From Scyliorhinus canicula (Eukaryota), in NCBI RefSeq assembly GCF_902713615.1, contig NC_052153.1, positions 192,309,394 through 192,373,393 of the forward strand: 64,000 bases of DNA, read 5' to 3'. Within the stretch, counting starts at the first letter, position 1. Every line of letters begins with the position of its first letter. The position numbers and the translations under genes were made by a program. The notes under the pieces were generated by a model, which searched no databases, was not told the DNA's origin, and saw only the letters and a program-made list of their open reading frames with translations. This document shows positions 9,260 through 53,379 of the stretch, in pieces.

Positions 9260-9655
9260 GGCTTTCACTGAATCGTTGGACAATGACCGTGGCGGATGGT
9301 GTGAGTGTGGGGGAGGGGGGAACGGCTGTCCTGCCGTGTGGTTTCACCCACCCCCCACCCCCTAATCAGAGCATCAATGGCTCCGTGATGTGGCTCACCT
9401 CTGTCTCAGGGAAAGATAACATGGTTTTCCGATGTACATATCCTGGTACAGACCCTTCACAGGATGGACCGTGTGAGAGTGGGAAGCAGCGGGATGCTGG
9501 GAGCCGATTCCGATTCGTGGGCAATCTCAGCAACAATGATGCCTCAATAATGATGGAGCGACTGAGCCGGGCGGACAGCAATGTTTATCACTGCCGTGTG
9601 GAGCTCAACATCGACAAATTTCAAGTACCGCAAGGAACCGATCTGACAGTGAATG
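9260..9655 (+). CDS. Exon: V-set Ig domain 1, Siglec-15-like
   Basis: (CT)n tract + cacAG acceptor; donor G|gtgag; 396 bp, phase 1-1. WTMTV..V....[11 protein letters not shown]...W...VFRC...C...RFRFVGN..NDASI..ERL.RAD..VYHCRVE...G..LTV follows the Siglec-15 V-set pattern as I recall it, including the extra VFRC..C cysteine pair and the F-strand Arg. Confidence 0.92.
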
Positions 9656-27900: not shown

Positions 27901-30900
27901 GAAAAGGACCCATTAATCCCGACTCTTTGTTTCCTCTCTGCCAACCAATTTTCTATCCACCTCAATACATTTCCCCCAATCCCATGCTCTTTAATTTTGC
28001 GCAATAATCTCTTATGCGGGACTTTGTCAAACGCCTTCTGAAAGTCCAAATATACCACATCGACTGGCTCCCCCTTGTCAACTGTACTGGTTACATCTTC
28101 AAAGAATTCCAACAGGTTTGTCAAGCATGATTTTCCCTTCATCAATCCATGCTGACTCTGATGGATCCTGCCACTGCTTTCTAAATGTTCCGCTATAAAG
28201 TCCTTGATAATGGATCCAAGCATTTTCCCCACTACCGATGTTAGGCTTACTGGTCTATAATTCCCTGCTTTCTCTCTACCTCCCTTTTTGAATATTGGAG
28301 TGACATTAGCTACCCTCCAATCTGCAAGGACAATTCCAGAATCTATAGAATCACGGAAGATGATCACCAATGCATCCACTATTTCCAGAGCCACCTCCTT
28401 AAGCATTCTGGGATGCAGATTCTCCTTCTTCATCAATCCCTTCGTCCTTCTTTGCTGAATTCTAAACTGCTCCCAAGCCTCAGACCTATTATTTCTCTTG
28501 GCCAATCTGTATGCTTCTTCCTTGTATCGGATACTATTTCTAATTTCCTTTGCAAGCCATGGATTGGCTCTCTTACCTCCTTTGCTTTTGTGCCAGACAG
28601 GAATGAACAGTTGCTGTAGTTCCTCCATGCGTTCCTTGAACATTTGCCATTGCCAACCACTGTCATCCCTTTAAGTAACTATCCCCAATCTATCAAGGCC
28701 AACTCACACCTCATATCCTCATAGTTCCCTTTATTAAGATTCAGCACCCTAGTCTCCGAATCAACTACTTCACTCTCCATCTTGATAAACAATTCTACCA
28801 TGTTATGGTCGCTCATCCCCAAGGGGTCTCATACAGCCAGATTGGCAATGATTCCCTTCTCATTACACAGTACCCAGTCTAAGATGGCCTGCTCTCTAGT
28901 TGGTTCCTCCACATATTGGTCAAGAAAACCATCCCGTACACACTCCAGGAATTCCTCCTCTACGGCATTGTGGCTAATTTGATTTGCCCAATCTATGTGA
29001 AGGTTAAAATCGCCCATGATCACCGATATTCCCTTATTACATGCATCTCTAATTCCTTGTTTAATGCCATTCCCAACCTCACCAGTGCAGTTTGGGGGTC
29101 TATATATGACACCCAATGATGTTTTTTGCCCCTTGGTATTTCTCAACTCTACCCATACAGATTCCACATTGTCAGAGCTAATATCCTTTCTCACTATTGT
29201 GTTAACTTCCTCTTTAACCAGCAGTGCCACGTCACCACCTTTTCTTCTATGCCTGTCCTTCCTAAATACTGAGAACCCTGGAACATTCAGTTCCCATCCC
29301 TGTTCACCCTGCAACCATGTCTCTGTAATCCCAATTATATCATACCCATTTATATCTATCTGCGTGATTAGTTCATCCACTTTATTGCAAATACTCCGTG
29401 TATTAAGGCACAGAGCCTTTAAGTTTGTTTTATTCACATGGGTTTGTCACGGCTTTGGAAGCTGCTGCCTTCATCTTGTGGTGTGGGAAATGTAGCAGCC
29501 AATTTGCACACAGCGAAGTGCCACAAACAGCAATGGGTCCAGACCGGTTAACCTGGTTCATTCAGTGATTTTGGCTGAGGGGTGGCCAAGGTGCCAGGGA
29601 GGAAGCCTCTGTTCTCGGTTGAAATAGTGACATAGCGACCATGGAATTTTTCACATCATCTATCAGACTACCTAAGTTTAATGTCGCACTGGAAAGATAG
29701 CTCCTCTGGCAGTGCTTGCACTGCATCAGTGCCACACTAAAGCGTCAGCCTAGGTTTTGTGTTTGAAGTCTCTGGAGTGGGGGGGGGGGAGGGGAGGTTT
29801 GAAACCACCACCTTCCGACTTGGGGAGCAGCGGGGGGTGCGTACTACCCACTGAGCCACTGCTGAAATCTGAGGATAAATATGTCCGATCGCTGGCACTG
29901 TTTCACAGCTGTTTGTCTTACAGAACAAGGCGACTCCTGTACCTATGCTGAGATCGACAGGAGAACAGGTACGCTGCCCCTAATGGTTTTGTGCTGTTAT
30001 CTATTTTGTAACCCGAATTCCATCTCCAACCAACAGATCTTTTTGTTTTTGTTAAAGATGACAAGAGGTTCACAATCAATGCGTCAGAAGACCGTGAGTG
30101 AATGTTTCCTTTCACGTTGATTAAAAGTTGTAGTTTCAAATCTCTCCCGCTCCCCCCTATCTTTAAGAGCTGATTCCTTTGTTAGCCTGCCTCCCTGAGA
30201 AGGGAGCACTTGATCCCTCAATAGGCCACCATTTGGGGCGGTACGGTGGCGCAGTAGTTAGCACTGCTGCCTCACGGGCGCCGAGGACCCGGTTCGATCC
30301 CGTGTGGAGTTTGCGCATTCTCCCCGTGTTTGCGTGGGTCTCACCCCCTACGACCCAAAGATGTGCCGGGTAGCTAGATTGGCCACGCTAAATTGCGCCT
30401 TTATTGGGAAAAAAAAATAATAGACGACCATTCTACTCCCAGGTTTCATGCCTGTCCCACCGTCGGAAATTCTTCCCAAATGAAAATTCCCGATTCAGTT
30501 TTGAGTCGCCACGGACTCTCCCCGAAGGAGCTGCTTCACCGAGTGGATCCCAACCGACCCCACACCCTCAGCATGGACTTGTGAAGGGGAAGGTGATGTC
30601 TGATCAGCTTGAGTTAAAGCTTTGAGGAAGTAGCAAGGAGGGTCAATGGGGGTGGGGGGGGGTGGGGGGTGGTGGTATTTGTGGTTACGGGGATAGGGCG
30701 GGAGGGGGAGCTTGCTCGGGTGCTCAGTAAGGGGTATGGTGCAGCCTCAATGGGCTGAATAATAATAATAATCCTAATTGTCACAAGTAGGCTTACATTG
30801 ACACTGCAATGAAGTTACTGTGAAAATCCCCTCAGCGCCACATTCCGGCGCCTGTTCAGGTACACAGAGGGAGAATTCACAATGTCCAATTCACCCAACA

Positions 30901-33900
30901 AGCACGTCTTCTGGGACTTGCGGGAGGAAACCGGAGCACCCGGAGGAAACCCACGCAGACACGGGGAGAACGCGCAGACTCCGAACAGACAGCGACCCAA
31001 GCCGGGAATCGTACCCGACACCCTGACGCTGTGAAGCCACAGCGCTAACCACTGTGCCGCCAATGGCCTCCATCTGCACTGTAGGGGTTCTATGGATTCT
31101 CTGGAAAGTTGGATCCAAAATTGGTTTGGTGGCAGGAAGCAAAGTGTTCTGGTTGATGGGTGATTTTGGGGTGATTGGAAGGCTGTTTCTCAGCAGGGTT
31201 CCCAATGGCTCAGCACTGGGTGGCTCGCTGTTTTGTGTTAGAATCTATCTGTGTTCGGAACTGACACAGAGGGGAAAGGATTAAGAATTTTACCGCAGAT
31301 GCAAAAATTGGCCGCGTGGTTGATAGAGAAAGAAAGCTCCAGTCTGCAGAAAGATATCTATGGACTGATGAGAAAACTGGTAAATGTAACCGAAAATGGA
31401 GAAGTATGAAGTAATGCACTCGGGGAAGAAGAAACCGGGGAAAGGGTTGCACACTTAATGGTAAGGATTCTGAAAAATGAGAAGTAACAGGAGAATATTT
31501 GTCTCTAGATCCCTCACGGCAGCACAGCGTCTAGATAAACTGGATTGGATTTGGATTTGTTTATTGTCACGTGTATCGAGGTACAGTGAAAAATATTTTT
31601 CTGCGAGCAGCTCAATCAGATCATTTAGTACAGGAAAATAAAATAAAATAAAAAGATAATTCATACTCCAGGGCAACACAAGGTCCATAATGTAAAATAC
31701 ATAGACACCGACATCGGGTGGAGCATACAGGGTGTAGTATTAATCAGGTCAGTCCATAAGGAGTTTAGGAGTCTGGTGACAGTGGGGAAGAAGCTGTTTT
31801 TGAGTCTGTTCGTGCGTGTTCTCAGACTTCTGTATCTCCTGCCCGATGGAAGAAGTTGGAAGAACAAAGAACAAAGAACAAAGAAAATTACAGCACAGGA
31901 ACAGGCCCTTCGGCCCTCCCAGCCTGCGCCGATCCAGATCCTTTATCTAAACCTGTCCCCTATTTTCCAAGGTCTACTTCCCTCTGTTCCCCGCCCATTC
32001 ATATACCTGTCTCGATGCTTCTTAAATGATGCTATCGTGCCCGCCTCTACCACCTCCGCTGGTAAAGTGTTCCAGGCACCCACCACCCTCTGCGTAAAAA
32101 ACTTTCCACGCACATCTCCCTTAAACTTTCCCCCTCTCACCTTGAAATCGTGACCCCTTGTAACTGACACCCCCACTCTTGGGAAAAGCCTGTTGCTGTC
32201 CACCCTGTCCATACCTCTCATACTTTTGTAGACCTCAATCAGGTCCCCCCTCAACCCCCGTCTTTCCAACGAAAACAATCCTAATCTACTCAACCTTTCT
32301 TCATAGCTAGCACCCTCCATACCAGGCAACATCCTGGTGAACCTCCTCTGCACCCTCTCCAAGGCATCCACATCCTTCTGGTAAAGTGGCGACCAGAACT
32401 GCACGCAGTATTCCAAATGTGGCCGAACCAAAGTCCTATACAACTGTAACATGACCTGCCAACTCTTGTACTCAATACCCCGTCCAATGAAGGCAAGCAT
32501 GCTGTATGCCTTCTTGACCACTCTATCCACCTGCGTTGCCACCTTCAGGGTACAATGGACCTGAACTCCCAGATCTCTCTGTACATCAATTTTCCCCAAG
32601 ACCCTTCCATTGACCATATAGTCCGCTCTTGAATTTGATCTTCCAAAATGCATCACCTCGCATTTGCCTGGATTGAACTCCATCTGCCATTTCTCTGCCC
32701 AACTCTCCAATCTATCTACATTTTGTTGTATTCTCTGACAGTCCTCCTCGCTATCTGCAACTCCACCAATCTTGGTATCATCTGCAAACTTGCTAATCAG
32801 ACCACCTATACCTTCCTCCAGGTCATTTATGTAGATCACAAACAACAGTGGTCCGAGCACGGATCCCTGTGGAACACCACTAGTCACCCTTCTCCATTTT
32901 GAGACACTCCCTTCCACCACTACTCTCTGTCTCCTGTTGCCCAGCCAGTTCTTTATCCATCTAGCTGGTACACCCTGAACCCCATACGACTTCACTTTTT
33001 CCGTCAACCTGCCATGGGAAACCTTATCAAACGCCTTACTAAAGTCCACGTATACGACATCTACAGCCCTTCCCTCATCAATTAACTTTGTCACTTCCTC
33101 AAAGAATTCTATTAGGTTTGTAAGACATGACCTTCCCTGCACAAAACCATGCTGCCTATCACTGATAAGTCTATTTTCTTCCAGATGTGAATAGATCCTA
33201 TCCCTCAGTATCTTCTCCAACAGTTTGCCTACCACTGACGTCAAGCTCACAGGTCTATAATTCCCTGGATTATCCCTGCTACCCTTCTTAAACAAAGGGA
33301 CAACATTAGCAATTCTCCAGTCCTCCGGGACCTCACCCGTGCTCAAGGATGCTGCAAAGATATCTGTTAAGGCCCCAGCTATTTCGACCCTCGCTTCCCT
33401 CAGTAACCTGGGATAGATCCCATCCGGTCCTGGGGACTTGTCCACCTTAATGTCTTTTAGAATACCCAAAACTTCCCCCTTCCGTATGACAACTTGACCG
33501 AGAGTATTTAAACATCCATCCCTAGCCTCAACATCCGTCTTGTCCCTCTCCTTTGTGAATACCGATGCAAAGTACTCATTAAGAATCTCACCCATTTCCT
33601 CTGAGTCCACGCATAAATTTCCTCTTTTGTCTTTAAGTGAGCCAATCCTTTCTCTAGTTACCCTCTTGCTCCTTACATACGAATAAAAGGCTTTGGGATT
33701 TTCCTTAACCCTGTTAGCCAAAGATATTTCATGACCCCTTTTAGCCCTCTTTATTGCGCGTTTGAGATTCGTCCTACTTTCCCGATATTCCTCCAAAGCT
33801 TCATCAGTTTTGAGTTGCCTCGATCCTATGTATGCTTCCTTTTTCATCTTAGCTAGTCTCACAATTTCACCCGTCATCCATGGTTCCCTAATCTTGCCAT

Positions 33901-36900
33901 TTCTATCTTTCATTTTCACAGGAACATGTCTGTCCTGTACTTTAATCAACCTTTCCTTAAAAGACTTCCACATTTCAAATGTGGATTTACCCTTAAACAG
34001 CTGCTCCCAATCCACATTCCCTTGCTCCTGCCGAATTTTGTTATACTCTGCCTTTCCCCAATTTAGTACTCTTCCTTTCGGACCCCTCCTGTCCTTGTCC
34101 ATGAGTATTCTAAAACTTACGGAATTGTGATCGCTATTTCCAAAGTAATCACCGACTGAAACATCAACCACCTGGCCGGGATCATTCCCCAATACCAGGT
34201 CCAGTATGGCCCCTTCCCGAGTTGGACTATTTACATACTGCTCTAAAAAAAACTCTCCTGGATGCTCCTTACAAACTCTGCTCCATCTACGCCTCCAACA
34301 CTACACGAGTCCCATTCAATGTTGGGGAAGTTAAAATCTCCCATCACAACCACCCTATTGCTCCTACATTCTTCTATAATCTGTCTGCATATTTGTACCT
34401 CTACTTCATGCTCGCTTTTGGGAGGCCTGTAGTAAAGTCCCAACAATGTTGCTGCACCCTTCCTATTTCTCAGCTCCACCCATATTTCCTCATTGCTCGA
34501 ATCCTCCATCATGCCCTCCTTAATCACAGCTGTGATATCATCTCTGACGAGTAATGCAACTCCTTCCACCCCTTCTACCTCCCTCTCTATCCCTCCTGAA
34601 GCATCTATACCCTGGGATATTCAGTTGCCAGTCCTTCCCTTCCGTCAACCAAGACTCAGTAATACCAATAACATCACATTCCCAGGTACTAATCCAAGCC
34701 CTAAATTCATCTGCCTTACCTGCTACACTTCTCGCATTAAAACAAATGCACCTCAGACCACCTTTGCGTTCATCATCTCTTCCCTGTCTACTCTTCCCCT
34801 TAGTCACATTGAGTTTATTATCTCGTACCTTACTGGCTTTAGTTGCTGCTTCTTTACTGACCTCTAACTTCCTAATCTGGTTCCCATCCCCCTGTCACAT
34901 TAGTTTAAAACCTCCCCAACAGTGTTAGCAAAAGCACCCCCTAGGACATTGGTTCCAGTCCTGCCCAGGTGTAGACCATCCGGTTTGTAATGGGCCCACC
35001 GCCCCCAGAAGAGTGAGTAAGCCGGGTGGGAGGGATCCTTGATTATGCTGCCCGCACTTCCGGTGGCGGCCATGGAGGAGTAGGTCTCACATTTGATAGC
35101 TCCCGCCTGTAACGGACTTTTGGATCTTTATCTCCCGTTTTTATCCTGGATTTTATGGGATAAATGGGTGAAGAGAGAGACAGTAAGGAGAAATCCCCCT
35201 CCGGTGTAGGGAGAATTGGACCAGACGTGGCTGGGTGAGAAGACAAAGTCCGATAACGAAGACGCGAGCAGAGCTGGTAACACGGGACAGCATGGCGGAG
35301 AGCAAGGGCCGCGAGGAGACGGCACAGTGGTCGACGGAGCAGCTGGTGAAGTTTTTCGAGGATTGCTTCGCCAAACTGAAGAAGGACACGCTGGACCCGA
35401 TTAAGGCTTCGATTGATCAAGTGGTTCAGAATCAGGAAACCCACGGGAGAGCGATCCAGGAGGTAGAACAAAAGTTGTCCGAGCACCAGGAGTATATAAC
35501 CGTGCTGGAAAGCGAGGTGGGGATGATGAACAACCGCCAGGAAAGAATGCAGGAGAAGCTGGAGGATCTGGAGAATAAGTCCAGGAGGCAGAATCTCAGA
35601 ATTGTCGGCCTCCCTGAAGGCAGTGAGGGATCGGATGCGAGGGCCTATGTAACGGACATGTTGGAGAAGTTGATGAGGGCTGGGGCGTTCCCTCGGCCCC
35701 TCGAATTGGACAGAGCGCACAGAGCCCTCGCGAGGAAGCCCAGAGCCAACGAGCCGCCGAGGGCCATGGTGGTACATTTTGGACAAGGAACACGTTTTGC
35801 GGTGGACCAAGAAAGAACGGAGCAGCAAGTAGGAGAACTGTGAGCTGCGCATCTATCAAGACCTGGGAGCGGATTTGGCCAAGAGGCGAGCTGGGTTCAA
35901 TCGGGCAAAATCGGCCCTCTTTAAGAAGGGGGTGAAGTTCGGGATGCTGTACCCAGCCCATCTGTGGGTCACACATGAGGAACGGGACTTCTACTCTGAA
36001 ACGGCAGACAAAGTATAGACCTTCATTAAAGAAATGAAGTTGGAGGCGAATTAAAAGACACTTAAGCCTTGGAGAAGTACTGTGGTGGAAAAGTACTGTG
36101 GCAGCAATTTGTGGTGCTGGATTGTAAAAGTTTAAGTAGGTCTATGTGAAATAATGGGCTGTGTGGATGGTTAAAGGTTGATCTGTCTTTCAGGGACTTT
36201 GTTAGGGGGTGGTGGGCTTTGAATTTAGTTCTGCTTTTTGGGTGACAATTTTTCTAAAGTGATTGTTTCTTCACTGTTTTTTTCTGTTGTTTGTTTACTG
36301 GAAAATGTAATGCTTTTAAAATGTTTCTTCATGTGGGGGGGTGGGAGAGAGGAGAGTACAATAGGGAGACAGACTGCTTGGTGCCGGGGCGGGAGCTATC
36401 GAGTCAGCATGGGTCAGTTAACGCTCGGAAGCGCAGTGGGGGGTGGACAGGTATTAAGCTGGAGCTTGACTTGGGGGATTGGGTTTTTAGTTGTTGCTCG
36501 GTGGGGGGGGGGGGGGGGGAGCTGCTTTGCTGACAGGGGTGGAACTGTTACTAGGGGACAAATGGGAGGTCGGGAACGGCGACTGCCCGAGTGGGGACTC
36601 GAGGGCGTGTGCTCGAGGTTGGCCTAAAAAGGGTGATGGCTAGATGGCCGGGGGGGGGGGGGGGGGGGGGGGGGTGTTGGTTGGAAGCCCCCCCGTCCAG
36701 GCTGATCACATGGAACATAAGAGAACTGAATGGGTCAGTCAAGAGGGCTCGCGTGTTTGCGCATTTGAGGGAACTGAAGGCGGACGAGGCAATGCTACAA
36801 GAGACACACCGAAAGGTTACAGATCGGACGAGATTGAGAAAGGGGTGGGTCAGGCAAGTATTCCACTCAGGGCTGGACTCAAAGACCAGGGGGGTAGCGA

Positions 36901-39900
36901 TATTGATCAGCAAACAAGTGGCATTCGAGGCAGGGAGAATCGTGTCAGACAAGGGGGGTAGGTACATAATGGTGAGTGGGAAGCTGGAGGGGGTGCGGGT
37001 GGTACTTGTGAACATAGATGCTCTGAATTGGGACAATGTGGAATTTATGAGGCAGGTGTTAGGTAAGATCCCAGACTTAGAGTCACATAACCTGATCATG
37101 GGAGGAGACTTCAACACAGTCATTGATCCGGAATTGGACCGGTCAAAATCCAGGACAGGGAGGAGGCCGGCAGCGGCAAAGGAATTGAAGGGGTTTATGG
37201 AACAGATGGGGGAAGTAGACCCAGGGAGGTTTGCACGGCCGAGGACGAAGGAGTTTTCCTTTTTTTCACATGTCCACAAGGTATATTCCCGTATCGACCT
37301 TTTTGTTCTGAGCAGGGCGCTAATACCGAAGGATACTGAGTACTCGGCAATCGCAGTGTCGGATCATGCCCCACATTGGGTGGATCTACGGGTTAGTATG
37401 GAGAGAGGGTAACGCCTGCTGTGGAGACTGGATGTGGGGTTGCTAGCGGACGAGGCGGTCTGTGGGCGGGTTAACAAGTCCATCCAGAACTCCTGGAAAC
37501 AAATGATACGGGGGAGGTCTCTGCAGCAACGGTTTGGGAAGCTTTGAAGGCAGTAGTCAGAGGGGAATTAATCTCGATACGGGCCCACAGAGAAAAGGCA
37601 GAACGGGCTGAGAGGGATAGATTAGTGGAGGAGATACTCCAGGTGGACAGGAGATACTCGGAGGCCCCGGACGCGGGGCTACTGAGGGAGCGGCGGAGGT
37701 TACAGGCGGAGTTTGGGCTGTTGACCCCAGGGAAAGCGGTGGAACAGTTGAGGAAGGCAAGGGGGGCGATCTATGAGTACGGGGAAAAGGCAAGCAGAAT
37801 GTTGGCACACCAGCTCAGGAAAAGAGAGGCGGCCAGGGAGATAGGTAAAGTAAAGAGTAGAGACGGTAACACTGTCCTGGACCCAGAGGGGGTGAACGAG
37901 GTGTTCAATGACTTTTTACAGTAAATTATATGAGTCGGAACCCCCGGCTGGGGTGGAGGGGATGAGGCAGTTTCTGGATCAGTTGAGGTTCCCGAGGGTG
38001 GAGGAGGACCTGGTGGAGGGGCTGGGAGCCCCAATTGAGATTGAGGAAATAATCAAGGGGCTGGAGGGCATGCAGTCGGGCAAGGCCCCGGGGCCTGACA
38101 GCTACCCGGTGGAATTCTACAAGACGTTTTCAGAGATATTGAGCCCACTGCTGGTGAGGACATTTAACGAAGCAAGAGAGAAGGGTGTCCTCCCCCAAAC
38201 AATGTCGCGGGCCTCAATTTCATTGATCCTGAAATGGGAGAAGGATCCGGAGCAATGCGGGCATCGGGTGAAGCATACAGGGTGTAGTGTTAATGAGGTC
38301 AGTCCATAAGAGGGTCATTTAGGAGTCTGGTGACAGTGAGGAAGAAGCTGTTTTTGAGTCTGTTCGTGCGTGTTCTCAGACTTCTGTATCTCCTGCCCGA
38401 TGGAAGAAGTTGGAAGAGTGAGTAAGCCGGGTGGGAGGGATCCTTGATTATGCTGCCCGCTTTCCCCCGGCAGCGGGAGGTGTAGATGGAGTCAATGGAT
38501 GGGAGGCAGGTTTGTGTGATGGACTGGGCGGTGTTCACGACTCTCTGAAGTTCCTTGTGGTCCTGGGCCGAGCAGTTGCCATACCAGGCTGTGATGCAGC
38601 CCGATAGGATGCTCTCTATGGTGCATCTGTAAAATGCAGGGGAGTTGAGGAGTAAATTTGTCCGCTCTGCTAGAGGAGGTCTCCGACTCACTGCCTGATA
38701 GGGTGCTCGAGGCGGAAACAATCCCATCAGCCCATTTACAAAGAAACATTTTGAGCGGCATTTGAAGAACCCAATCCTCAAGGGTTCCGGGCCAAAAGAT
38801 GGAAGGTGGGAGTAAACTGTGGTGTGTTGGGTAAGCTGGGTCTGCGAGGACTGTGTTTACTGCAGTGGTGAGAGAGACAGGCTTCCAACACTTGAAGAAA
38901 TGCAACTCGATTTTATTGAACTCTTAACTATCATACATACTTTAACTGTGGGTTGACACTATGCTGAGTTGACTGGAGACCTGAGGCTAACCTGACCAGA
39001 CTATCTTACTACCACATGGTGTTTGTTCTAGTTGCTGCTCACGAGCTCTGACTGTCTCAGAGGCTGGATCCCGAGAGAGCGGGAAAACTAGTGCCCTCTG
39101 GCTTTATAGTGGCCATGTCCTGTCTGGTGATTGGCTGCTGTGTTCTGTGTGTTCATTGGTCATCCTGTGTGTCAATCACTGCCTGTATGTGCACCATCGT
39201 ATACCTGGATGTATATTATAACATCCCCTCCCTCTTCTTTTTTACTTTAAAAGATAATGTATATAGGTCAATAAATAGTGAGTGTGTGTACAGGAGCCTG
39301 ACTATATACAAAGTACGTGAGCGTATTTACATGGGAAGGTGTCTGGTGCAGATAGAGGGCAGACAACAACTTAGGAAGAAACAATATGTACAGATGTATA
39401 AACGAATCACAAGGCAATGCAACATTCAGTCTATAAATTCAGTCTCTGTGGCGGGTGACGAATTCTGGTTGACCACCTCAAGGGTGGATCAGGGGCCGCC
39501 TGCACTGGAACGGGCGGAGCTGCCTCCAATGTAGAGGGCGGTAAAAGAACTGGCAGATCGGTGACCTCATGGAAGGGCGCGTCCTGAGAAACCAGTAGGC
39601 GAGGCCGAGGAAAGGAGCCATCAGGCATGTGAACGAGGAACGATCTCGGGGCCACTGGCTTAACCACCACAGCTGTGGCAGACCAGCCACCGTCAGGTAG
39701 CTGAACACGAGCTCGGTCAGCAGGGACCAGAGCAGGGAGATCTGTGGAGTGGGCACCGTACGCCGACTTGCATTGTACCCAAGACTGTTGCATCCTTTGC
39801 AGGACCGGAAAGTTGTCAAGGTCCGGGATGTGGATAGCCGGCACCGTCATCCGTAGTGTGCGGTTCATTGGGAGCTGTGCAGGGGACAGGCCAGCGGACA

Positions 39901-45900: not shown

Positions 45901-46136
45901 ACGGTAGCACAGTTGCTTCACAGCGCCAGGGTCCCAGGTTCAATTCCCGGCTTGGGTCACTGTCTGTGCGGAGTCTGCACGTTCTCCCCGTGCCTGCCTG
46001 GGTTTCCTCCGGATGCTGCGGTTTCCTCCCACAGGTCCCGAAAGACGTGCTTGTTAGGTGGATTAGACATTCTGAATTCCCTCTCTGTGTACCCGAACAG
46101 GCTTTGTTGAGAACCTTGGACACAATGCCAGCAGAG

Positions 46137-46171
<35 letters not shown>

Positions 46172-49100
46172 AGCGTTAACTATCTGCATACTTCAGAGGC
46201 TGGAAGGGGTTATTGATGGCCTCAGAGAATCATTTATGCTCACCAAGCTTTTTGCTAGTCGGGGTGGGGGGTGGGGGGGGGGGGGGGGGGGGGGGGATGG
46301 CGTCACAAAACACCCAGCAAGGTTACATTTGATCTCTTGCAGTTCACAATCAGTAAGCTGCAGTTGTCAAAAACAGAACTACTGAAATGTGTGTGGAGGC
46401 AGCGCCGGCCCTAGGGTTGCTGGCGCCCCGGGCCAGCTGAACTTCGGCGCCCTTGGGGGGGGGGGGGGGGGGCCGAGAGGGGGGGAGGCCGAGAGGGGGG
46501 GGGGGCCGAGAGGGGGGGGGGGGGCACGATTGAGGGGGGGGGACCAGGAAGAGAAGGCGTGAGGGCGAGGAGAGGGGGGGGGGGGGCCCAGGAGAGGGGG
46601 GGGGGGGGTGCCGAGAGGTGGGGACCGCGGAGGGGGGGGGACCGAGGAGGGGGAGGGGGGGCGGCGCGTCGAGGGGCGGGGGAGGCCGAGAGGTGGGGGG
46701 GACCGAGAGGCGGGGTGCGAGGGGAGGGGGGGGGGCGGTGGGCGGGCGAGCGGAGGGGGAGGGGGGCTGCGAGGGGGGGAGGTTGGCCCAAGAGGGGGGG
46801 GGGGTGGGGGGAGGGATGGGGGCGGGGCCTGAGGGGGAGGGCGGGCGGACGGAAGGGGGACGGAGGAGGGGCGGGGTGACGAAGGGGACGGATGGGGCGG
46901 AAAGGGCCCGACTGGGCCGCAGGGAGGGCCACCGCGAAGCGCTGGTTGGCACCGGCCCAACTGCGCATGCGCGGGAGACTACCGAGTCTCTGGCGCCCCC
47001 TAGCACATGGCCGCCAAGGGAGCATTGACCGAGTGCGGTTACCTTGGGCGGCCCTGTGTGGAGGGGAAAGGTCCAGATATGTATCACTTTGGGAGGACAG
47101 GGGAAACACCCAAACCCCCAGTCCAGTGTCTTGTCCATGACGGGCAAGCTTGTGTAGAATCGAGCCTGATGGATGCTTCTTAGCCATTTGTGAGGTTGCT
47201 GCCGGAGGAGGTGGTGGAAGCAGGGACCATAGTGACGTTTTCAGGGGCAGTTTGCAGTTGTACAAAACTCTGGTGCGGCCGCATTTGGAGTATTGCGTGC
47301 AGTTCTGGTCGCCACATTATAGGAAGGATGTGGAAGCATTGGAAAGGGTACAGAGGAGATTTACAAGGATGTTGCCTGGTATGGAGGGAAGATCATATGA
47401 GGAAAGGCTGAAGGACATGAGGCTGTTTTCGTTAGAGAGAAGACGGTTAAGACGGTGACTTAATGAGGCATACAAGGTGATCAGAGGATTAGATAGGGTG
47501 GACAGTGAGAGCCTTTTTCTCGGATGGTGATGTCTAGCACGAGGGGGACATAGCTTTAAATTAAGGGGAGATAGATATAGGACAGATGTCAGAGGTAGGT
47601 TCTTTACTCAGAGAGTAGTAAGGGCGTTGGAATGCCCTGCCTGCAACAGTAGTGGACTCGCCAACCCTAACGCATTCAAATGGTCATTGGATAGGCATAT
47701 GGACGATAAGGGAATAGTGTAGAGGGACTTTAGAGGGGTTTCACAGGACGGCGCAACATCGAGGGCCCGAAGGGCCTGTACTGCGCTGTAATGTTCTATG
47801 TTCTATGTTCTTTGTTCTATCTTAACAAATACATGAATAGGATGGGAATAGAGGGATATGGACCAGGAAGTGTAGAAGATTTCTGTTTAGATGGGCAGCA
47901 TGGTCGGCACAGGCTTGGAGGGCCGAAGGGCCTGTTCCTGTGCTGTACTTTTCTTTGTTCCTTGTTCATAAAGTGTCCAATTACATTTTTCACGGACATT
48001 TGATGAGCAGACAAATGTCTCGAACTGATGTCTCGCGAGTCATGAAAGTCCAGTTAACTCTGAGGGAGACCCCTATTCGACTCTCGATGTTTAACTTTGT
48101 TTCTGCCCCCACAGATCCTGCCAGATGCCTGTGTTCCTCCAGCATTTTTCTTTGTTTAAAATCAAACCCTTCCTTTTCCAGGAAGGTGTATTCATTTCTG
48201 CGGCCGATTGACCCATTGCCAGCTGCCGAGAGGGAACCATGGGTATTTGAGGAACAACTACACCTCAGGCCACCTCCTTCGTGCCAATATTTACTGAATT
48301 GGCAGCACCAGTGCACCTGGGCTGTGAATTCCAGTTCGTTCACACCTCCATCCCCCCTCCCCCCCCCCACCACCTCCTACATAACCTCCATGTCCTAGTC
48401 CCCCGCCCAGATATTCCCTTATTTATCTCCTTAACCCTATTCCCCCTCCTTGCCCCTACCCCCCCTTTACACCAATCTCTCCTCCTTCACTCCATCCCCC
48501 ATCCCCCCTCCTTCACCCCATCCTCCTCCCCTCATCCTTCATCCCATTCTTCCTCCATTCACCCCATCCCCCTCCTTCACCCCATCCCCCCCCCCTCCTT
48601 CATCCCACCCTCCTCCCTCACACCCCCATTCCCTCATCCTTCACACCCACCCCCACCTCCCCTTCACCCCCATCCCCCCTCCTTTCACCAATCCCCCCTA
48701 CTTACCCAATGCCCCCTTCCCTCCACCACCCCATCCCCATTTTTTTTTTTTTTTCATCTTCCATCCCCATCACCCCTACTTGAGGCCCCCTTCCCCCTCC
48801 TTTACCCCTCCCCCACCCTTCCTTTACCCCATCACCCCTTCCTTACACCACATCCCCCCTCCTTCACCCCGATCTCCCCTCCTTTACTCCCATCCCCCCT
48901 CCTTCCCCTCCATATCCCTCTCCTGCATCCCTCCCTCCCCCCCCCCCCCCCTTTACCTCCACGTCCCCATCACCCCCGACTATCACCCCCTCCTTCACCA
49001 CCAGCCCGGAGCACCCGGAGGAAACCCACGCAGACACGGGGAGAAGGTGCAAACTCCCCACAGGCAGTCACCCGCGGCCGGAAATGAACCCGGGTGCCTG

Positions 49101-49724
49101 GCGCTGAGAGGCAGCAGTGCTAAGCACTGTGCTGCCGTGCCGCCCGAGAATTCTTCATTCCTCCAGTTCCGGTCTCTTGTGTACCCCCCTGCCCTGATCC
49201 CCATCGCAACACCATTGACGGCCGCACCCGTAGGCTGGGAACTCCGGGATCTTTCCCGAAAGCCCTCCTCCTCCTGGCCTCTCTTCACCCCCAATCACCA
49301 CGACCTGATCAGCTTGACCAAGTGTTTGATCACCTGCCCTAACATCACCTTCTGTGGCTTGGTGTTGAATTCTGTCCGATCTTGTGGCAGTGATGATTCA
49401 CAACGCTGAAGGTGTGATATAAATACAAAGGTGCTGTTGTGCTGAAAGATTATTGGAATCTCGAGTCAGCAGGCCGGAGGAGCAAAACAGTTTCAGAGTC
49501 GATACCGTTTGTGTTACAGCTCAGCCGGATTCCTGTATGTATGCCAGCGTGGTGATTGGCAGCAACAGAAAAGGTAACCCCTTATAAACCGGTCTTCAAC
49601 ATATTTCAGATATTTTTCCATTTATTGATATTTGGCAATGTTTTGAATTCATCCTCCCGTCTAACGGAAGCTTCTCCTTCAGACCAGGGTGGCAAGCATC
49701 TCCGCACCGCTGATTCGGAAGAGA
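9260..49724 (+). CDS. Gene A (partial, spliced): Siglec-15-like V-V-TM immunoglobulin-superfamily receptor with two cytoplasmic ITIM-like motifs; exons 9260-9655, 10753-11106, 14840-14944, 19975-20014, 21306-21367, 29924-29968, 30058-30093, 49520-49573, 49683-49724
   Basis: All nine exons have AG acceptors with pyrimidine-rich tracts and GT donors. Phases chain without a stop (1-1,1-1,1-1,1-2,2-1,1-1,1-1,1-1,1-1), giving 378 codons: V1-V2[128 protein letters not shown]. Leader and terminal exons not found; no transcript evidence. Confidence 0.75.
9665..10045 (+). repeat. Intronic minisatellite, 31-bp core CCCTCCACATCATGTTCAGGGTGGTAGCTGT (about 11 units)
   Basis: Direct tandem units with 31/36/37-bp variants, starting about 10 bp after the V1 donor. 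Confidence 0.97.
10352..10514. repeat. About 163-bp inverted-repeat hairpin, probably Penelope-like-element derived
   Basis: Arms TAAGAAGTCTTACAA..GCTCC and GGAGC..TGTAAGACTTCTTA are about 70 bp with about 5 mismatches; second copy at 52627-52787. Confidence 0.85.
10432..10466 (+). ncRNA. Minimal type I hammerhead ribozyme motif
   Basis: CAC-CUGAUGA-A-GGAGC-AGC-GCUCC-GAA-AGCU-C-GUG: stem I CAC/GUG, core CUGANGA, 5-bp stem II, GAAA, palindromic stem III AGCU, UC cleavage site. Activity untested. Confidence 0.6.
10753..11106 (+). CDS. Exon: V-set Ig domain 2
   Basis: ttcctttcctcAG acceptor; G|gtaag donor; 354 bp, phase 1-1. [24 protein letters not shown]...DSHTYLC..TQLQV is a canonical V-set C-W-DxxxYxC framework. 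Confidence 0.93.
11531..11723 (+). mobile_element. Short tRNA-derived SINE without V-domain, sharing the GTGACAATAA tail (representative copy)
   Basis: GGGGCTGGTTTAGCAC..GGTTCGATTCCC head; (TTTCA)n end. Others at about 16525-16683, 41800-41905, 53803-53995, 58658-58815. Confidence 0.85.
12130..13680 (+). mobile_element. CR1 3' fragment interrupted by a GC-rich non-coding repeat (about 12860-13510)
   Basis: [18 protein letters not shown]; CR1 3' UTR resumes at about 13510; counterpart at about 54400-55950. Confidence 0.75.
14420..14722 (+). mobile_element. V-SINE with alternative tail (..GGCGACTAGGGG..GTGACAATAAAG), representative copy
   Basis: Same head and V-domain, different 3' half. Others at about 17550-17855-, 20515-20810-, 30760-31060-, 45895-46100+, 56700-57005+, 59682-59990-. 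Confidence 0.88.
14840..14944 (+). CDS. Exon: transmembrane segment (not in ORF track)
   Basis: gttttacAG acceptor; G|gtgggt donor; 105 bp, phase 1-1. [22 protein letters not shown] followed by an RKK stop-transfer motif; no charged residue in the core. Confidence 0.9.
15415..17365 (-). mobile_element. Degenerate CR1 with SINE insertions (copy B counterpart at about 57695-59495)
   Basis: RT and C-terminal motifs in several frames. Confidence 0.85.
19975..20014 (+). CDS. Exon: cytoplasmic 1 ([13 protein letters not shown])
   Basis: ttttatctctttAG acceptor; AAG|gtagga donor; 40 bp, phase 1-2; open in frame; conserved in copy B. Confidence 0.7.
21306..21367 (+). CDS. Exon: cytoplasmic 2 ([21 protein letters not shown])
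   Basis: gtatttctcAG acceptor; CAG|gtaatg donor; 62 bp, phase 2-1, which restores the phase needed between its neighbours. Confidence 0.68.
21480..25574 (+). mobile_element. Near full-length CR1 LINE, frameshifted
   Basis: ORF1 zinc finger/coiled coil ([16 protein letters not shown]) and SGNH esterase (GDSIVRG..HIGTND); ORF2 APE (VAITETW, GDFN) and RT (QGSVLGP); ttctatgttctatg tail. Confidence 0.95.
26141..26510 (+). mobile_element. Solo LTR, 370 bp, 5-bp TSD CCACT
   Basis: TGTGG...CAACA ends; CCACT at 26136-26140 and 26511-26515; TATA-like TTAAATA at about 26224; AATAAA at about 26436. Confidence 0.82.
26860..29440 (-). mobile_element. CR1 LINE ORF2 (APE+RT), degenerate
   Basis: [12 protein letters not shown] in 28829-29437; 405-aa RT frame with [20 protein letters not shown]. 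Confidence 0.94.
29924..29968 (+). CDS. Exon: tyrosine-motif exon 1 ([15 protein letters not shown])
   Basis: gtttgtcttacAG acceptor; CAG|gtacgc donor; 45 bp, phase 1-1; contains YAEI. Confidence 0.75.
30058..30093 (+). CDS. Exon: spacer exon 1 ([12 protein letters not shown])
   Basis: tttttgtttttgttaaAG acceptor; |gtgagt donor; 36 bp, phase 1-1; 89-bp intron after the Tyr exon; resembles 49683-49724. Confidence 0.68.
31864..35007 (-). mobile_element. CR1 LINE with 749-aa uninterrupted RT frame; TSD GAAGA; inserted in a Rex1 fragment
   Basis: ORF 31943-34192; APE in 34243-34807; GAAGA at 31859-31863 and 35008-35012; the Rex1 sequence is contiguous across the insertion. Confidence 0.95.
35056..38260 (+). 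mobile_element. L1-clade LINE, 5' part (ORF1, APE, start of RT), 3'-truncated
   Basis: ORF1 coiled coil + [21 protein letters not shown]; APE ITWNI..LQETH..GGDFN..SRID..SDH; [14 protein letters not shown]. Confidence 0.92.
38261..38634 (-). mobile_element. Rex1/Babar LINE fragment
   Basis: [36 protein letters not shown]. Confidence 0.88.
38820..39223 (-). repeat. Gypsy 3' LTR
   Basis: 404 bp; preceded on the minus strand by a polypurine tract at about 39224-39243. Confidence 0.93.
40858..42110 (-). mobile_element. 5'-truncated CR1 LINE nested in Gypsy pol, itself interrupted by a SINE 3' half (about 41800-41905)
   Basis: RT C-terminus [26 protein letters not shown]; (TTCTATG)n tail at about 40860; Gypsy reading resumes on both sides. 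Confidence 0.92.
44934..44942 (-). promoter_or_regulatory. Primer-binding site TGGTACCAG (tRNA-Leu(UAA)-like)
   Basis: Abuts the 5' LTR; complementary to a tRNA 3' end ...CUGGUACCA. The tRNA assignment is from memory. Confidence 0.65.
44943..45346 (-). repeat. Gypsy 5' LTR
   Basis: TG...CA on the minus strand, 404 bp; about 21 substitutions versus the other LTR by my count. Confidence 0.93.
46139..46169. repeat. (GT)n microsatellite
   Basis: About 15 units. Confidence 0.95.
46400..47056. mobile_element. GC-rich non-autonomous hAT-type DNA transposon (MITE), 8-bp TSD TGTGGAGG
   Basis: Imperfect TIRs CAGCGCCGGCCC / GGGCGGCCCTG; TGTGGAGG at 46392-46399 and 47057-47064; poly-G interior. Partial copies at about 49927-50210 (3' half) and 62762-63070 (5' half). 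Confidence 0.88.
47230..47960 (+). mobile_element. CR1 3' fragments (two tails)
   Basis: [28 protein letters not shown]; ttctatg and ttctttg tails. Confidence 0.88.
48350..49000. repeat. C/T-rich low-complexity tract
   Basis: About 650 bp of CCCCATCC/CCTCCTTCA-like units, almost free of G. Confidence 0.9.
49520..49573 (+). CDS. Exon: tyrosine-motif exon 2 ([18 protein letters not shown])
   Basis: gtttgtgttacAG acceptor (nearly identical to that of 29924); AAG|gtaacc donor; 54 bp, phase 1-1; contains YASV. Confidence 0.75.
49683..49724 (+). CDS. Exon: spacer exon 2 ([14 protein letters not shown])
   Basis: cttctccttcAG acceptor; |gtaagt donor; 42 bp, phase 1-1; 109-bp intron after Tyr exon 2. 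Confidence 0.7.
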
Positions 49725-50449
49725 GTAAGTCAGATTTTCAATTCACAACGCTATTCCTGATATTCCCATCTTTCCCGAGGCCCCCAAGGCCATTCTCCTC
49801 GGGGCTGGGCCATCCATCTCACTGTTATTGGGCTTCGCTTGTTTGTTGGTGCCACCCCCCCCCAGAAGGTTGGATGGCATGTATCTCCATCTCTGACTGT
49901 CCTGTTGCCCTTCCACAGCCCGCATAGGGGGGGGCCGAGAGGGGGGGGCGAGGGAGGGGGGCGGGGCCGAGGGAATGGGGCGGCACGAGGGAAGGGGCCG
50001 GGCGGACGGAAGTGGGGACGGAGGGGGGGGTGGACGGAAGGGGGACGGAGGGGGCGGAAGGGGCCGCCCTGGGGGAGGGCGGCCACCGCGCATGCGCTGG
50101 TTGGCACCGGCCCAACTGCGCATGCACGGGACCCGAGTCTCTGGCGCCCCCCAGCACATGGCGCCCAGGGCGACTGCCCGAGTTTGCCGGTACCATTGGG
50201 CCGGCCCTAGTGGGGGGAAAGGTCCAGATATGTATCACTTTGGGAGGACAGGGGAAAACACCCAACCCAGTCAAGTGTCTGGTCCCTGACGGCGGCAGCT
50301 TGTGTTAGAATCGAGCCTGATGGATGCTTCTTAGCCGTTGTGAGGTTGCTGCCGGAGGAGGTGGTGGAAGCAGGGACCATAGTGACGGTTCAGGGGCAGC
50401 TGCATTGTACAAAAACTCTGGTGCGGCCGCATTTGGAGTATTGCGTGCA

Positions 50450-50549
50450 NNNNNNNNNNNNNNNNNNNNNNNNNNNNNNNNNNNNNNNNNNNNNNNNNNN
50501 NNNNNNNNNNNNNNNNNNNNNNNNNNNNNNNNNNNNNNNNNNNNNNNNN
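50450..50549. other. Assembly gap (100 N)
   Basis: Exactly 100 Ns, typical of an unsized scaffold join. Confidence 0.99.
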
Positions 50550-52325: not shown

Positions 52326-53025
52326 CCGTGAATTCAACAAGTACACACCCCCTCCCTCGCCCCCAGCCTGGTGTTGGAGCTCTCCTGTTTGCCTCCTGCC
52401 CAGCCTCCAAAATCGGAAACAATGGGCTCTCTCCTGTAAAGGCATTGGCTGGAACCTCTTAAACTCTCATTGGGTGAGCACATAGCGGGATGAGGGGAGG
52501 GGGGGACTTCTGGAGTAATGGGGCTGGGGGAGGTGGGGTAATCCCTGAACCAATTCAAAGAACAATTTGATTTTGCAATTGCAGCCATGATGTGGAGATG
52601 CCGACGTTGGACTGGGGTGAGCACAGTAAGAAGTCTTACAGCACCAGGTTAAAGTCCAAGGTTTGTTTCAAACAGTGGCTTTCGGAGCGCAGCTCCACCT
52701 GATTCACCCGAGGAAGGAGCAGTGCTCCGAAAGCTCGTGTTTGAAACAGACCTGTTGGACTTTAACCTGGTGTTGTAAGACTTCTTATTTTGCAATGGGG
52801 GTGGGGTTTTGGATGAATGAATTTGACTGGATTGAATGGGCCCTTGTGATCTATCTGACACCAGGGAGTTCAGGGTGAAAGATGGGTGTGTTGGTGCAGT
52901 CTGTGAGAGAGACGAGTGGAGCCTTGGAGTATCCATTCTGTTGTGAAGTTGAAAGATACACAACAAATGGAATCTAAACATTCTGCAGACTGAAGGATTC
53001 ATTATGTTGTTTTTCCTTTCCTCAG

Positions 53026-53379
53026 TTGCCGGTGGAAATGAGTCAGTGGTGAGTGGCACTGAGGGAGCTTCGGTTACATTACCCTGTACGTTCATACCCA
53101 GGAACTCCCACACCCTGACCACTGTTAGCTGGATGAGGAAGGAGACCTATGAACGGGTGGTCACATTTACACCCCAGCCAAATGGATTGTGGACAACTGT
53201 AAACGGTGAAAATCGATACGAGCTCATCGGGAACCCAAAGGAGGGAAACGCCTCAATCAGGATAAAGCAGCTGAGCATGAATGATAGTCACACTTACCTG
53301 TGTCTGGTAGAGTACAAGGAGGAACGGGACCATTATCAATACCTGATCCAGACTGAGACACAGCTGCAGGTCAAACATG
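53026..53379 (+). CDS. Copy B exon: V-set Ig domain 2
   Basis: Same splice sites and length as 10753-11106; 4 substitutions seen (two synonymous; V to M in LSVND; Y to D in EERYH). Confidence 0.9.

What the first reader, a model, noticed from the sequence alone, without database searches (positions are those of the whole stretch)
29924..49724. Cytoplasmic tail built by duplicating a two-exon [Tyr motif + acidic spacer] cassette
Seen: 29924-30093 and 49520-49724 share one layout: near-identical acceptors (gtttgt[c/g]ttacag), a phase 1-1 exon xQxDSCxYAx(I/V), a short intron (89 vs 109 bp), then a phase 1-1 exon starting with D and ending ASED/DSEE. Inference: the tyrosine motifs were multiplied as symmetric cassettes, so each can be added or skipped without a frameshift, which would let splicing tune inhibitory strength. 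The last spacer ends on an open donor, implying at least one more exon, perhaps a third motif in the gap.
Basis: partly seen in the sequence, partly recalled or inferred. Interest (0 to 1): 0.72.

Follow-up and report, generated by a model that had tools for sequence, protein, structure and literature searches.

The report
Shark immune receptor tail from repeated mini-exons
The two small exon pairs are real, consecutive pieces of one shark immune-receptor gene whose inner tail was built by repeating a "tyrosine signal plus spacer" unit; this is a known way of building such tails, seen here in an unstudied gene family.

Summary
Confirmed. All four exons are phase 1-1 with AG/GT borders. They are the last readable exons of a nine-exon, 377-codon open gene for a Siglec-15-like receptor with two V-set domains, an uncharged membrane anchor and a tail of tyrosine motifs. 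The exon order matches RefSeq models from four other sharks.

RNA contigs from three runs splice 30093 directly to 49520 and 49573 to 49683, so the pairs belong to one transcript. Past 49724 the RNA continues into an exon reading NVVYAAV, a canonical ITIM that is absent from the window.

The same RNA also joins 49724 back to 49520. A linked one-letter variant suggests a second, near-identical copy of cassette 2 outside the readable sequence, close to the N gap. A circular RNA is the rival reading.

The tyrosine exons are clearly duplicates. The spacer exons are shown to be homologous only through relatives. The duplication predates the split of the four shark orders compared, and rays re-duplicated their cassettes independently.

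RefSeq isoforms in relatives skip single cassette exons in frame. No skipping was seen in this species.

The scan has noted this family elsewhere in this genome. This is a new member of a known kind, of moderate interest.

The parts
9260..9655 (+). Exon for the first V-set domain (396 nt, phase 1-1). It is Siglec-15-like and keeps the CRVE arginine.
   Evidence: Pfam V-set E=5.5e-12. The best solved relative is human Siglec-15, 7zoz, E=1.2e-12, with CRVE aligned to CRVEF. Borders.
10753..11106 (+). Exon for the second V-set domain (354 nt, phase 1-1).
   Evidence: Pfam V-set E=1.2e-17. tblastn with P0005 gives 67% identity. Borders.
14840..14944 (+). Transmembrane exon (105 nt, phase 1-1). The hydrophobic span [22 protein letters not shown] has no charged residue and is followed by RKKG.
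   Evidence: Hydrophobicity scan, sequence, tblastn.
19975..20014 (+). Cytoplasmic exon 1 (40 nt, phase 1 to 2), encoding [13 protein letters not shown].
   Evidence: tblastn, sequence, open frame.
21306..21367 (+). Cytoplasmic exon 2 (62 nt, phase 2 to 1), encoding (R)[20 protein letters not shown].
   Evidence: tblastn, sequence, open frame.
29924..29968 (+). Cassette 1, tyrosine exon (45 nt, phase 1-1), encoding (E)[14 protein letters not shown]. The motif is C-T-Y-A-E-I.
   Evidence: The acceptor GTTTGTCTTACAG is at 29911-29923.
29969..30057 (+). The 89-nt intron inside cassette 1. Its branch-point and 3' region are conserved with the zebra shark orthologue, whose intron is 92 nt.
30058..30093 (+). 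Cassette 1, spacer exon (36 nt, phase 1-1), encoding [12 protein letters not shown].
   Evidence: Its last 30 nt sit in RNA directly upstream of 49520.
30094..49519 (+). The 19.4-kb intron between the cassettes, full of retroelement reading frames. The zebra shark orthologue has about 3.6 kb here.
   Evidence: ORF lists, RNA junction, L002 coordinates.
49520..49573 (+). Cassette 2, tyrosine exon (54 nt, phase 1-1), encoding (P)[17 protein letters not shown]. The motif is C-M-Y-A-S-V.
   Evidence: RNA depth is 100-300 on the exon and zero in the intron after it.
49574..49682 (+). The 109-nt intron inside cassette 2, removed in RNA.
   Evidence: A joint that skips 109 nt with GT..AG ends appears in three contig runs and one raw read.
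49683..49724 (+). Cassette 2, spacer exon (42 nt, phase 1-1), encoding [14 protein letters not shown]. Its donor is used in RNA.
   Evidence: Loose ends and contig pieces show two continuations: back to the start of a cassette-2 tyrosine exon, and (with one other letter) on to the terminal exon.
50450..50549 (.). Assembly gap of 100 N, 726 nt downstream of the last readable exon. It is flanked by a G-rich repeat on the left and a 31-bp minisatellite on the right. The terminal exon and the inferred extra cassette copy are not in the readable window. Their place was not sought.

Best explanation
The two exon pairs are consecutive coding exons in the cytoplasmic tail of one shark gene. The gene encodes a type I membrane receptor with two V-set Ig domains, the first Siglec-15-like and keeping the sugar-binding arginine. 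Its membrane anchor is uncharged.

The tail is made of phase-1 mini-exons. A two-exon unit, a tyrosine-motif exon (xQxDSCxYAx[I/V]) plus a mildly acidic spacer exon, was duplicated in tandem before the living shark orders split. Each unit adds 27-32 residues, so the tyrosines sit 27-32 residues apart.

The mRNA runs cassette 1, cassette 2, most likely a second near-identical copy of cassette 2, and then a terminal exon with a canonical ITIM (VVYAAV). Those last parts are not in the readable window.

Inferred, not shown: after ligand binding the tyrosines are phosphorylated and recruit tandem-SH2 phosphatases of the SHP-1/2 type. Cassette number and exon skipping would then set how many docking sites the receptor offers.
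For: - Gene model: nine exons with AG/GT borders give a 377-codon open frame. It is collinear end to end with RefSeq proteins of Mustelus, Heptranchias, Heterodontus and Stegostoma at 51-66% identity. The codons split across the junctions reproduce the homologues' residues, for example ED-P-QPDSC.
- RNA: the 49573 to 49683 joint appears in three runs plus one raw read. The loose end before 49520 equals 30064-30093 exactly. The loose end after 49724 reads N-V-V-Y-A-A-V in phase.
- Duplication: Y1 against Y2 is significant in all four sharks, and b1 against b2 is significant in Heptranchias, Heterodontus and Mustelus.
- Age of the duplication: unit 1 groups with unit 1 (55-75% identity) and unit 2 with unit 2 (59-78%) across species. 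Unit 1 against unit 2 within a species is only 34-47%.
- Conservation: the zebra shark gene has the same exons, the same acceptor motif and the same short introns. The skate has the same two-exon cassette twice, with more than 500 nt of near-identical flanking intron.
- Extra copy: 66-nt contigs join 49689-49724 (no mismatch) to 49520-49549. Contigs that reach the terminal exon carry one other letter in those same 36 bases. Both sets of contigs start at 49689, the signature of a k=31 bubble at 49719. The depth ratios of 1.80-1.94 fit two copies.
- Receptor type: the V1 domain aligns to Siglec-15 and the anchor has no charged residue.
Against: - The two motifs in the window have Cys at -2 and miss the strict ITIM consensus.
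- No phosphorylation or SHP-binding data exist.
- Spacer-exon homology is not significant inside the window.
- No exon-skipped form was seen in this species, although contigs drop rare forms.
- The inclusion of exon 29924-29968 in RNA was not seen directly. Only 30 letters of the loose end were shown.
- The three contig runs belong to one study and may come from one animal. Their label as RNA is a guess, supported by exon-only depth and the joints.
- The extra cassette copy is inferred from contig linkage, not from a read that spans both copies.
- The signal-peptide exon was not located.
Confidence: 0.82

Rival explanations
1. The 49724-to-49520 junction in RNA does not reflect a further genomic cassette. 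It comes from back-splicing, giving a 96-nt two-exon circular RNA, or from exon repetition by trans-splicing. The gene would then have only two cassettes plus the terminal exon.
For: - The junction has the geometry of a back-splice.
- No second copy of cassette 2 exists in the readable window.
- The depth ratio fits a circle about as abundant as the mRNA just as well as it fits two copies.
Against: - In each of three runs the exact window version of 49689-49724 continues only to 49520. Only the one-letter variant continues to the terminal exon.
- A circle formed from the same exon would share the variant, and the window version would also have to reach the terminal exon.
- An assembly gap lies 726 nt downstream, where a near-identical tandem copy would break an assembly.
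- Recent cassette duplication is documented in the skate.
Confidence: 0.15
2. Only the tyrosine exon was duplicated. The two 'spacer' exons are unrelated mini-exons that merely share size, phase and acidic ends, so there is no two-exon cassette.
For: In the window the spacer exons and the short introns are not significantly alike (83 and 93 of 500 shuffles; 455 of 2000). Heterodontus isoform X7 carries an extra tyrosine exon without a spacer.
Against: - The Heptranchias spacers are plainly alike (0 of 2000).
- Heterodontus (10 of 2000) and Mustelus (57 of 2000) point the same way.
- The four-way DNA alignment keeps the branch-point region and GTGGCAAG...TTCAGAAGA..GTGAGT in both cassettes of two species.
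- The skate duplicated both exons together.
Confidence: 0.08
3. The tyrosine motifs are not inhibitory docking sites. They act mainly as YxxPhi sorting or endocytosis signals, or bind other SH2 proteins, so cassette number tunes trafficking rather than inhibition.
For: YAEI and YASV fit YxxPhi, as read directly from the sequence. Cys at -2 departs from the ITIM consensus.
Against: - The terminal motif VVYAAV is a canonical ITIM, and it is conserved as V-[TI]-Y-A-A-V in relatives.
- The 27-32 residue spacing resembles that of tandem ITIM receptors (my own knowledge, not tested here).
- The anchor is neutral, as in inhibitory receptors.
- The two roles do not exclude each other.
Confidence: 0.2
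4. The two pairs belong to different genes or transcripts, for instance the tails of two tandem paralogues, or one pair is an unspliced relic.
For: The pairs lie 19.4 kb apart and the window holds a large segmental duplication.
Against: - The 30093-to-49520 junction is present in RNA of three runs.
- Both pairs lie inside one duplication unit, between the copy-A exons and the start of copy B.
- Homologues carry both units in one protein.
Confidence: 0.02

Closest known systems
RefSeq models of the same family in other cartilaginous fishes. Examples are Mustelus asterias LOC144495190 (XP_078071345), Heptranchias perlo XP_067838506, Heterodontus francisci XP_067885260, Stegostoma tigrinum 'Siglec-12' (P0182) and Leucoraja erinacea LOC129695285.
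   Same: They share the V-V ectodomain, the neutral anchor ending RKKGG, and the same order of tail exons: Y1, b1, Y2, b2, then a terminal V-x-Y-A-A-V. Overall identity is 51-66%. Exon borders and the acceptor motif are the same in the zebra shark.
   Different: All are automatic models, named 'uncharacterized' or given mixed Siglec, PILR or JAM-like names. I found no paper on them. Cassette content varies among them: three tyrosine exons in Heterodontus X7, no cassette 1 in P0184, a four-exon cassette present twice in Narcine. The window's gene seems to carry an extra recent copy of cassette 2.
Human Siglec-15 (PDB 7zoz)
   Same: It is the closest solved relative of the first V-set domain (E=1.2e-12). 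RW(S/T)M, AVLPC.FTHP, the extra cysteine pair, RFR..GN..ND.S and the arginine in CRVE all align.
   Different: From my own knowledge, Siglec-15 has a V plus a C2 domain, a lysine in its anchor that pairs with DAP12, and no ITIM, so it is an activating type. The gene here has V-V domains, an uncharged anchor and a tyrosine-motif tail.
CD33-related Siglecs and PILR-alpha (inhibitory sialic-acid receptors)
   Same: They have an arginine-bearing V-set head, a neutral anchor and a tail with an ITIM plus a second ITIM-like tyrosine. They recruit SHP-1/2 (PMC13358205, sections 4.3.5 and 8). CD33 V domains are weaker hits (E about 1e-5).
   Different: They have two tail motifs rather than three or four. 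Their motifs carry L/I/V/T at -2 rather than Cys. I know of no repeated two-exon cassette in them.
PECAM-1 (CD31) and CEACAM1 cytoplasmic tails
   Same: From my own knowledge, their tails are encoded by several short exons, with the ITIMs on separate exons. Alternative splicing of tail exons changes signalling (PECAM-1 exon 14 skipping; CEACAM1 long and short tails). This is the nearest known analogue of how the feature would work.
   Different: The ectodomains are unrelated. Their tail exons are not tandem copies of one cassette, and CEACAM1 splicing shifts the frame rather than keeping it.

Membership tests
ITIM (immunoreceptor tyrosine-based inhibitory motif) | Consensus (I/V/L/S)-x-Y-x-x-(I/V/L). 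| tested here: not met
   The two motifs in the window are C-T-Y-A-E-I and C-M-Y-A-S-V, with Cys at -2. The terminal motif, seen only in RNA, is V-V-Y-A-A-V and does meet the consensus. The window motifs are best called ITIM-like.
ITIM (immunoreceptor tyrosine-based inhibitory motif) | Phosphotyrosine-dependent recruitment of SHP-1, SHP-2 or SHIP, and inhibition of activation signals. | not testable with these tools
   This needs phosphopeptide binding and cell assays.
Siglec family | N-terminal V-set domain with the conserved sialic-acid-binding arginine on strand F. | tested here: met
   Pfam V-set. The alignment to Siglec-15 (7zoz) places CRVE on CRVEF. Whether the domain binds sugar was not tested.
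Siglec family | One or more C2-set domains following the V-set domain. | tested here: not met
   The second domain scores as V-set (E=1.2e-17), above every other Ig model. No C2-type exon lies between 11106 and 14840.
Siglec-15 orthologue | A charged lysine in the transmembrane segment for DAP12 pairing, and a short tail without an ITIM. | tested here: not met
   The anchor [22 protein letters not shown] has no charged residue. The tail carries tyrosine motifs.
Tandemly duplicated exon cassette | The copies share phase and layout and can each be removed without a frameshift. | tested here: met
   The exons are 45, 36, 54 and 42 nt, all phase 1-1.
Tandemly duplicated exon cassette | Sequence homology of both exons of the unit. 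| tested here: inconclusive
   The tyrosine exon plus its acceptor are significantly alike. The spacer exon is not significant in the window, but is significant in Heptranchias, Heterodontus and Mustelus and visible in the four-way DNA alignment.
Tandemly duplicated exon cassette | Both copies are spliced into one mRNA. | tested here: met
   The 30093-to-49520 and 49573-to-49683 junctions are present in RNA contigs.
Alternatively spliced cassette exons | Isoforms that lack single cassette exons. | tested here: inconclusive
   None was seen among the contigs of this species. They are present in RefSeq isoform sets of Mustelus (minus Y1), Leucoraja (minus spacer, or minus a whole cassette), Heptranchias (minus b1), Rhincodon (minus Y1) and Narcine (14 forms). 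Whether RNA supports those models could not be checked.

The most novel reading that the evidence does not exclude
Cassette number in this receptor family is evolving fast and may vary between individuals. The catshark gene would carry a very recent, near-identical extra copy of cassette 2 that the assembly could not resolve. Together with in-frame skipping, this would give a graded series of receptors with one to four docking tyrosines. The docking tyrosines would belong to a distinct, 450-million-year-old C-x-Y-A-x-(I/V/L) motif class whose Cys at -2 has a function of its own.
Probability: 0.25. Interest if true: 0.6.

Novelty: new member of a known kind. Interest (0 to 1): 0.4.

Why it matters
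It gives a checked gene model and transcript evidence for a shark receptor that automatic annotation seems to have missed. The receptor has a Siglec-15-like head joined to an inhibitory-type tail. This supports the idea that Siglec-15 is the activating survivor of an old family that also had inhibitory members.

The tail is a clean natural example of signalling valency built and rebuilt from in-frame mini-exon cassettes, and it happened independently in sharks and in rays. The conserved Cys-x-Tyr-Ala motif and the fixed spacing of about 27-32 residues can be tested directly with phosphopeptides.

It also marks a place where the assembly probably lacks coding exons. For immunology in general the principle is already familiar from PECAM-1, CEACAM1 and other Ig-superfamily receptors.

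Tried and rejected
- Terminal exon: I searched for it in 49725-50449 and across the whole window, by motif and with the 30-letter RNA loose end. It was not found.
- Signal-peptide exon: a pattern search found nothing, so the 5' end of the gene stays open.
- Further cassette copies or relics in the 19.4-kb intron: none found by motif or tblastn.
- Genomic loci of relatives: the Mustelus gene range was too long to fetch. Heterodontus X7 and Heptranchias P0183 are not on record. Only the skate and zebra shark loci could be read.
- Length-limited protein search with the V1 exon: it returned only two fragments. The unrestricted search was needed.
- Literature searches for a description of this family or of ITIM exon cassettes in sharks found nothing specific.
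- The idea that the pairs are tails of two tandem genes was rejected on the RNA junction.
- A tree of the cassette peptides was not built, because 27-32 residues are too few. An identity matrix was used instead.
- One sequencing-run search failed because the service was busy, and I repeated it.
- The third protein-database search was not spent. Contigs cannot span two identical cassettes, so it could not settle the open point.
Full report
**Observation**

The coordinates and every detail of the description hold. Exon a1 is 29924-29968 (45 nt) and is followed by an 89-nt intron and exon b1 at 30058-30093 (36 nt). Exon a2 is 49520-49573 (54 nt) and is followed by a 109-nt intron and exon b2 at 49683-49724 (42 nt). 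All four exons have AG/GT borders, are phase 1-1, and have lengths that are multiples of three.

The peptides are (E)[14 protein letters not shown] / [12 protein letters not shown] and (P)[17 protein letters not shown] / [14 protein letters not shown].

The resemblance is not chance:
- DSCxYAx[IVL] occurs exactly twice in the six frames of the window, both times on the + strand directly after an acceptor.
- The 13-mer acceptor GTTTGTSTTACAG occurs only at these two places, even with one mismatch allowed, against 0.15 expected.
- Acceptor plus tyrosine exon align with score 18, against 6.6 +/- 1.2 for shuffles (0 of 500).
- Within the window the short introns (93 of 500) and the spacer exons (83 of 500) are not significantly alike.

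**What the gene is**

The window is shark DNA full of retroelement reading frames. Earlier notes of this scan call the species the small-spotted catshark. I did not verify that.

Two open stretches at 9260-9655 and 10753-11106 are V-set Ig domains. An exhaustive protein search with the first one found RefSeq models from sharks, rays and amphibians. Several of these carry both tyrosine units in one tail.

A tblastn of those proteins on the window places nine exons in order on the + strand:
- V1 9260-9655
- V2 10753-11106
- transmembrane exon 14840-14944
- two cytoplasmic exons, 19975-20014 and 21306-21367
- the four exons of the finding

Joined, they give a 377-codon open frame with canonical splice sites throughout. 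The frame is collinear with proteins of Mustelus, Heptranchias, Heterodontus and Stegostoma at 51-66% identity. The codons split by the introns reproduce the relatives' residues, for example ...SED-P-QPDSC.

The closest solved relative of V1 is human Siglec-15 (7zoz, E=1.2e-12), with the arginine of CRVE aligned. The membrane anchor has no charged residue. The protein is therefore a Siglec-15-like head on an inhibitory-type body. It is not a Siglec-15 orthologue, and it lacks the C2 domains of canonical Siglecs.

**One transcript**

I laid three contig runs of one study and one raw oligo-dT run on 49300-49900. Depth is 100-300 on the two exons and zero in the 109-nt intron. The GT..AG joint that skips 109 nt appears in all three contig runs and in one raw read.

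The contigs that enter exon a2 carry, directly before 49520, the letters AGAGGTTCACAATCAATGCGTCAGAAGACC. This is 30064-30093 exactly and is unique in the window.

Behind 49724 the contigs continue with ATGTAGTGTATGCAGCTGTTGCGGGCAGGG. In phase this reads N-V-V-Y-A-A-V-A-G-R, a canonical ITIM that matches the terminal exon of all relatives (N-V-[TI]-Y-A-A-V-V). These letters are not in the window. No such exon lies in 49725-50449. In the zebra shark the terminal exon lies about 0.5 kb after b2. In the window that distance falls in a G-rich repeat and the N gap at 50450-50549. By instruction I did not try to recover what the gap holds.

**An unexpected extra junction**

In each contig run a 66-nt contig joins 49689-49724, without mismatch, to 49520-49549. 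That is b2 followed again by the start of a2.

The contigs that go from b2 to the terminal exon carry one other letter within those same 36 bases. Both sets of contigs begin at 49689, which is 49719 minus 30. This is the signature of a one-letter bubble at 49719 in a 31-mer graph. So the window's version of b2 is followed only by another a2, and only the variant version is followed by the terminal exon.

The simplest reading is a second, near-identical copy of cassette 2 between 49724 and the terminal exon, outside the readable sequence. Such a copy would also explain why the assembly breaks there. The depth of the a2-b2 contig is 1.94, 1.80 and 1.82 times that of the back junction. This fits two copies (expected 2.0) better than three (expected 1.5).

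A circular RNA about as abundant as the mRNA would give the same ratio. Only the variant linkage argues against it, and the three runs may come from one animal. I give the extra copy about 0.75 to 0.8.

With it the tail would carry CTYAEI, CMYASV, CMYASV and VVYAAV, spaced 27, 32 and 28 residues apart.

**Duplication history**

Y1 against Y2 is significant in all four sharks compared (0 of 2000 shuffles each). For b1 against b2 the counts are:
- window: 455 of 2000
- Mustelus: 57 of 2000
- Heterodontus: 10 of 2000
- Heptranchias: 0 of 2000 (GGKRFTISAAED against GGKGLTVAASEE)

A four-way DNA alignment with the zebra shark keeps several features in both cassettes of both species: the acceptor TGTTTGTnTTACAG, the tyrosine codon block, the branch-point region and the b-exon core.

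Units group by position rather than by species. Unit 1 against unit 1 is 55-75% identical and unit 2 against unit 2 is 59-78%. Unit 1 against unit 2 within a species is 34-47%. The duplication is therefore older than the split of Hexanchiformes, Heterodontiformes, Orectolobiformes and Carcharhiniformes.

Rays repeated the process:
- The skate has a 78-nt tyrosine exon plus a 30-nt spacer exon, twice, with more than 500 nt of near-identical intron around the spacer.
- An electric-ray paralogue has a four-exon cassette, twice.
- Heterodontus isoform X7 has a third tyrosine exon, and another Heterodontus gene lacks cassette 1.

**Skipping**

RefSeq isoform sets in relatives drop single cassette exons in frame:
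- Mustelus X3 lacks Y1.
- Leucoraja X2 lacks one spacer and X3 lacks a whole cassette.
- A Heptranchias form lacks b1, and the Rhincodon forms lack Y1.
- Narcine has 14 forms.

These are automatic models and I could not check their RNA support. In this species the only contig predecessors of a2 are its intron, b1 and b2, and its only successor is b2. No abundant skipped form is seen, but contigs lose rare forms.

**Mechanism**

Shown: the gene structure, the splicing, the duplication and the motif content.

Inferred from what is known of ITIM receptors:
- phosphorylation by Src-family kinases
- bivalent docking of tandem-SH2 phosphatases on tyrosines about 27-32 residues apart
- valency set by cassette number

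The Cys at -2 departs from the ITIM consensus. It is kept from sharks and rays to salamanders and caecilians (C-T-Y-A-D/S-I), so it is probably functional.

**Novelty**

Tails made of short exons in the same phase, with tyrosine motifs on separate exons and splice variants that change signalling, are familiar from other Ig-superfamily receptors. PECAM-1 and CEACAM1 are examples, from my own knowledge.

The family itself appears only as automatic models under mixed names. I found no paper on it. Other notes of this scan describe Siglec-15-like genes nearby on the same chromosome.

I rate this a new member of a known kind, with interest about 0.4.

Noticed in passing
window 9662-20591 and 51936-62761: This is a segmental duplication at 97.5-98% identity. 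Copy B holds V2 (53028-53378), the transmembrane exon (57123-57230) and cytoplasmic exon 1 (about 62145-62185). It has no V1 exon in readable sequence. It departs from copy A at 62761, at a G-rich repeat like the one at 46400-46900. Its tail cannot be judged because the window ends at 64000.
   Followed up: partly
window 9692-10047 and 50550-52327: A 31-bp minisatellite sits in the V1-V2 intron. Copy A has 11 units. Copy B has at least 53 units, directly abutting the N gap.
   Followed up: partly
window 29911-29923 and 49507-49519; L002 about 27675-27689 and 31439-31451: The GU-rich acceptor TGTTTGT[C/G/A]TTACAG precedes both tyrosine exons in this shark and in the zebra shark. The skate has a looser form (GTG[C/A]TTTACAG). 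It may be a conserved splicing-control element, but this was not tested.
   Followed up: partly
window 49689-49724 joined to 49520-49549 in RNA: RNA shows a junction from the spacer exon of cassette 2 back to the start of its tyrosine exon, at depth 59-89. It is linked to a one-letter difference at about 49719, the second base of a Glu codon. This points to an extra cassette copy or to a circular RNA.
   Followed up: partly
proteins P0174, P0171, P0179, P0015 and others (Narcine bancroftii): An electric-ray paralogue has a four-exon tail cassette present twice (DNDRTYETL / DTCTYASL / NCSTYDN / DSSYENL) and 14 RefSeq isoforms that drop single exons in frame. Its 3' end reads into a retroelement-like sequence, so the model's end is probably wrong.
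   Followed up: no
window 22054-25494, 35187-38306 (+) and 667-1542 (-): Long reverse-transcriptase and endonuclease reading frames of LINE-type elements sit inside the introns. They account for much of the growth of the cassette 1 to cassette 2 intron from about 3.6 kb in the zebra shark to 19.4 kb here.
   Followed up: no
proteins P0022, P0025, P0135, P0113: Salamander, caecilian and sawfish relatives are named Siglec-12, Siglec-15 or PILR-alpha by automatic annotation. They keep a C-[TV]-Y-A-D-I motif. All but the sawfish (P0113) also have a V-T-Y-A-[AV]-V motif downstream of it. The tail motif pair is therefore older than the split of cartilaginous and bony vertebrates.
   Followed up: partly
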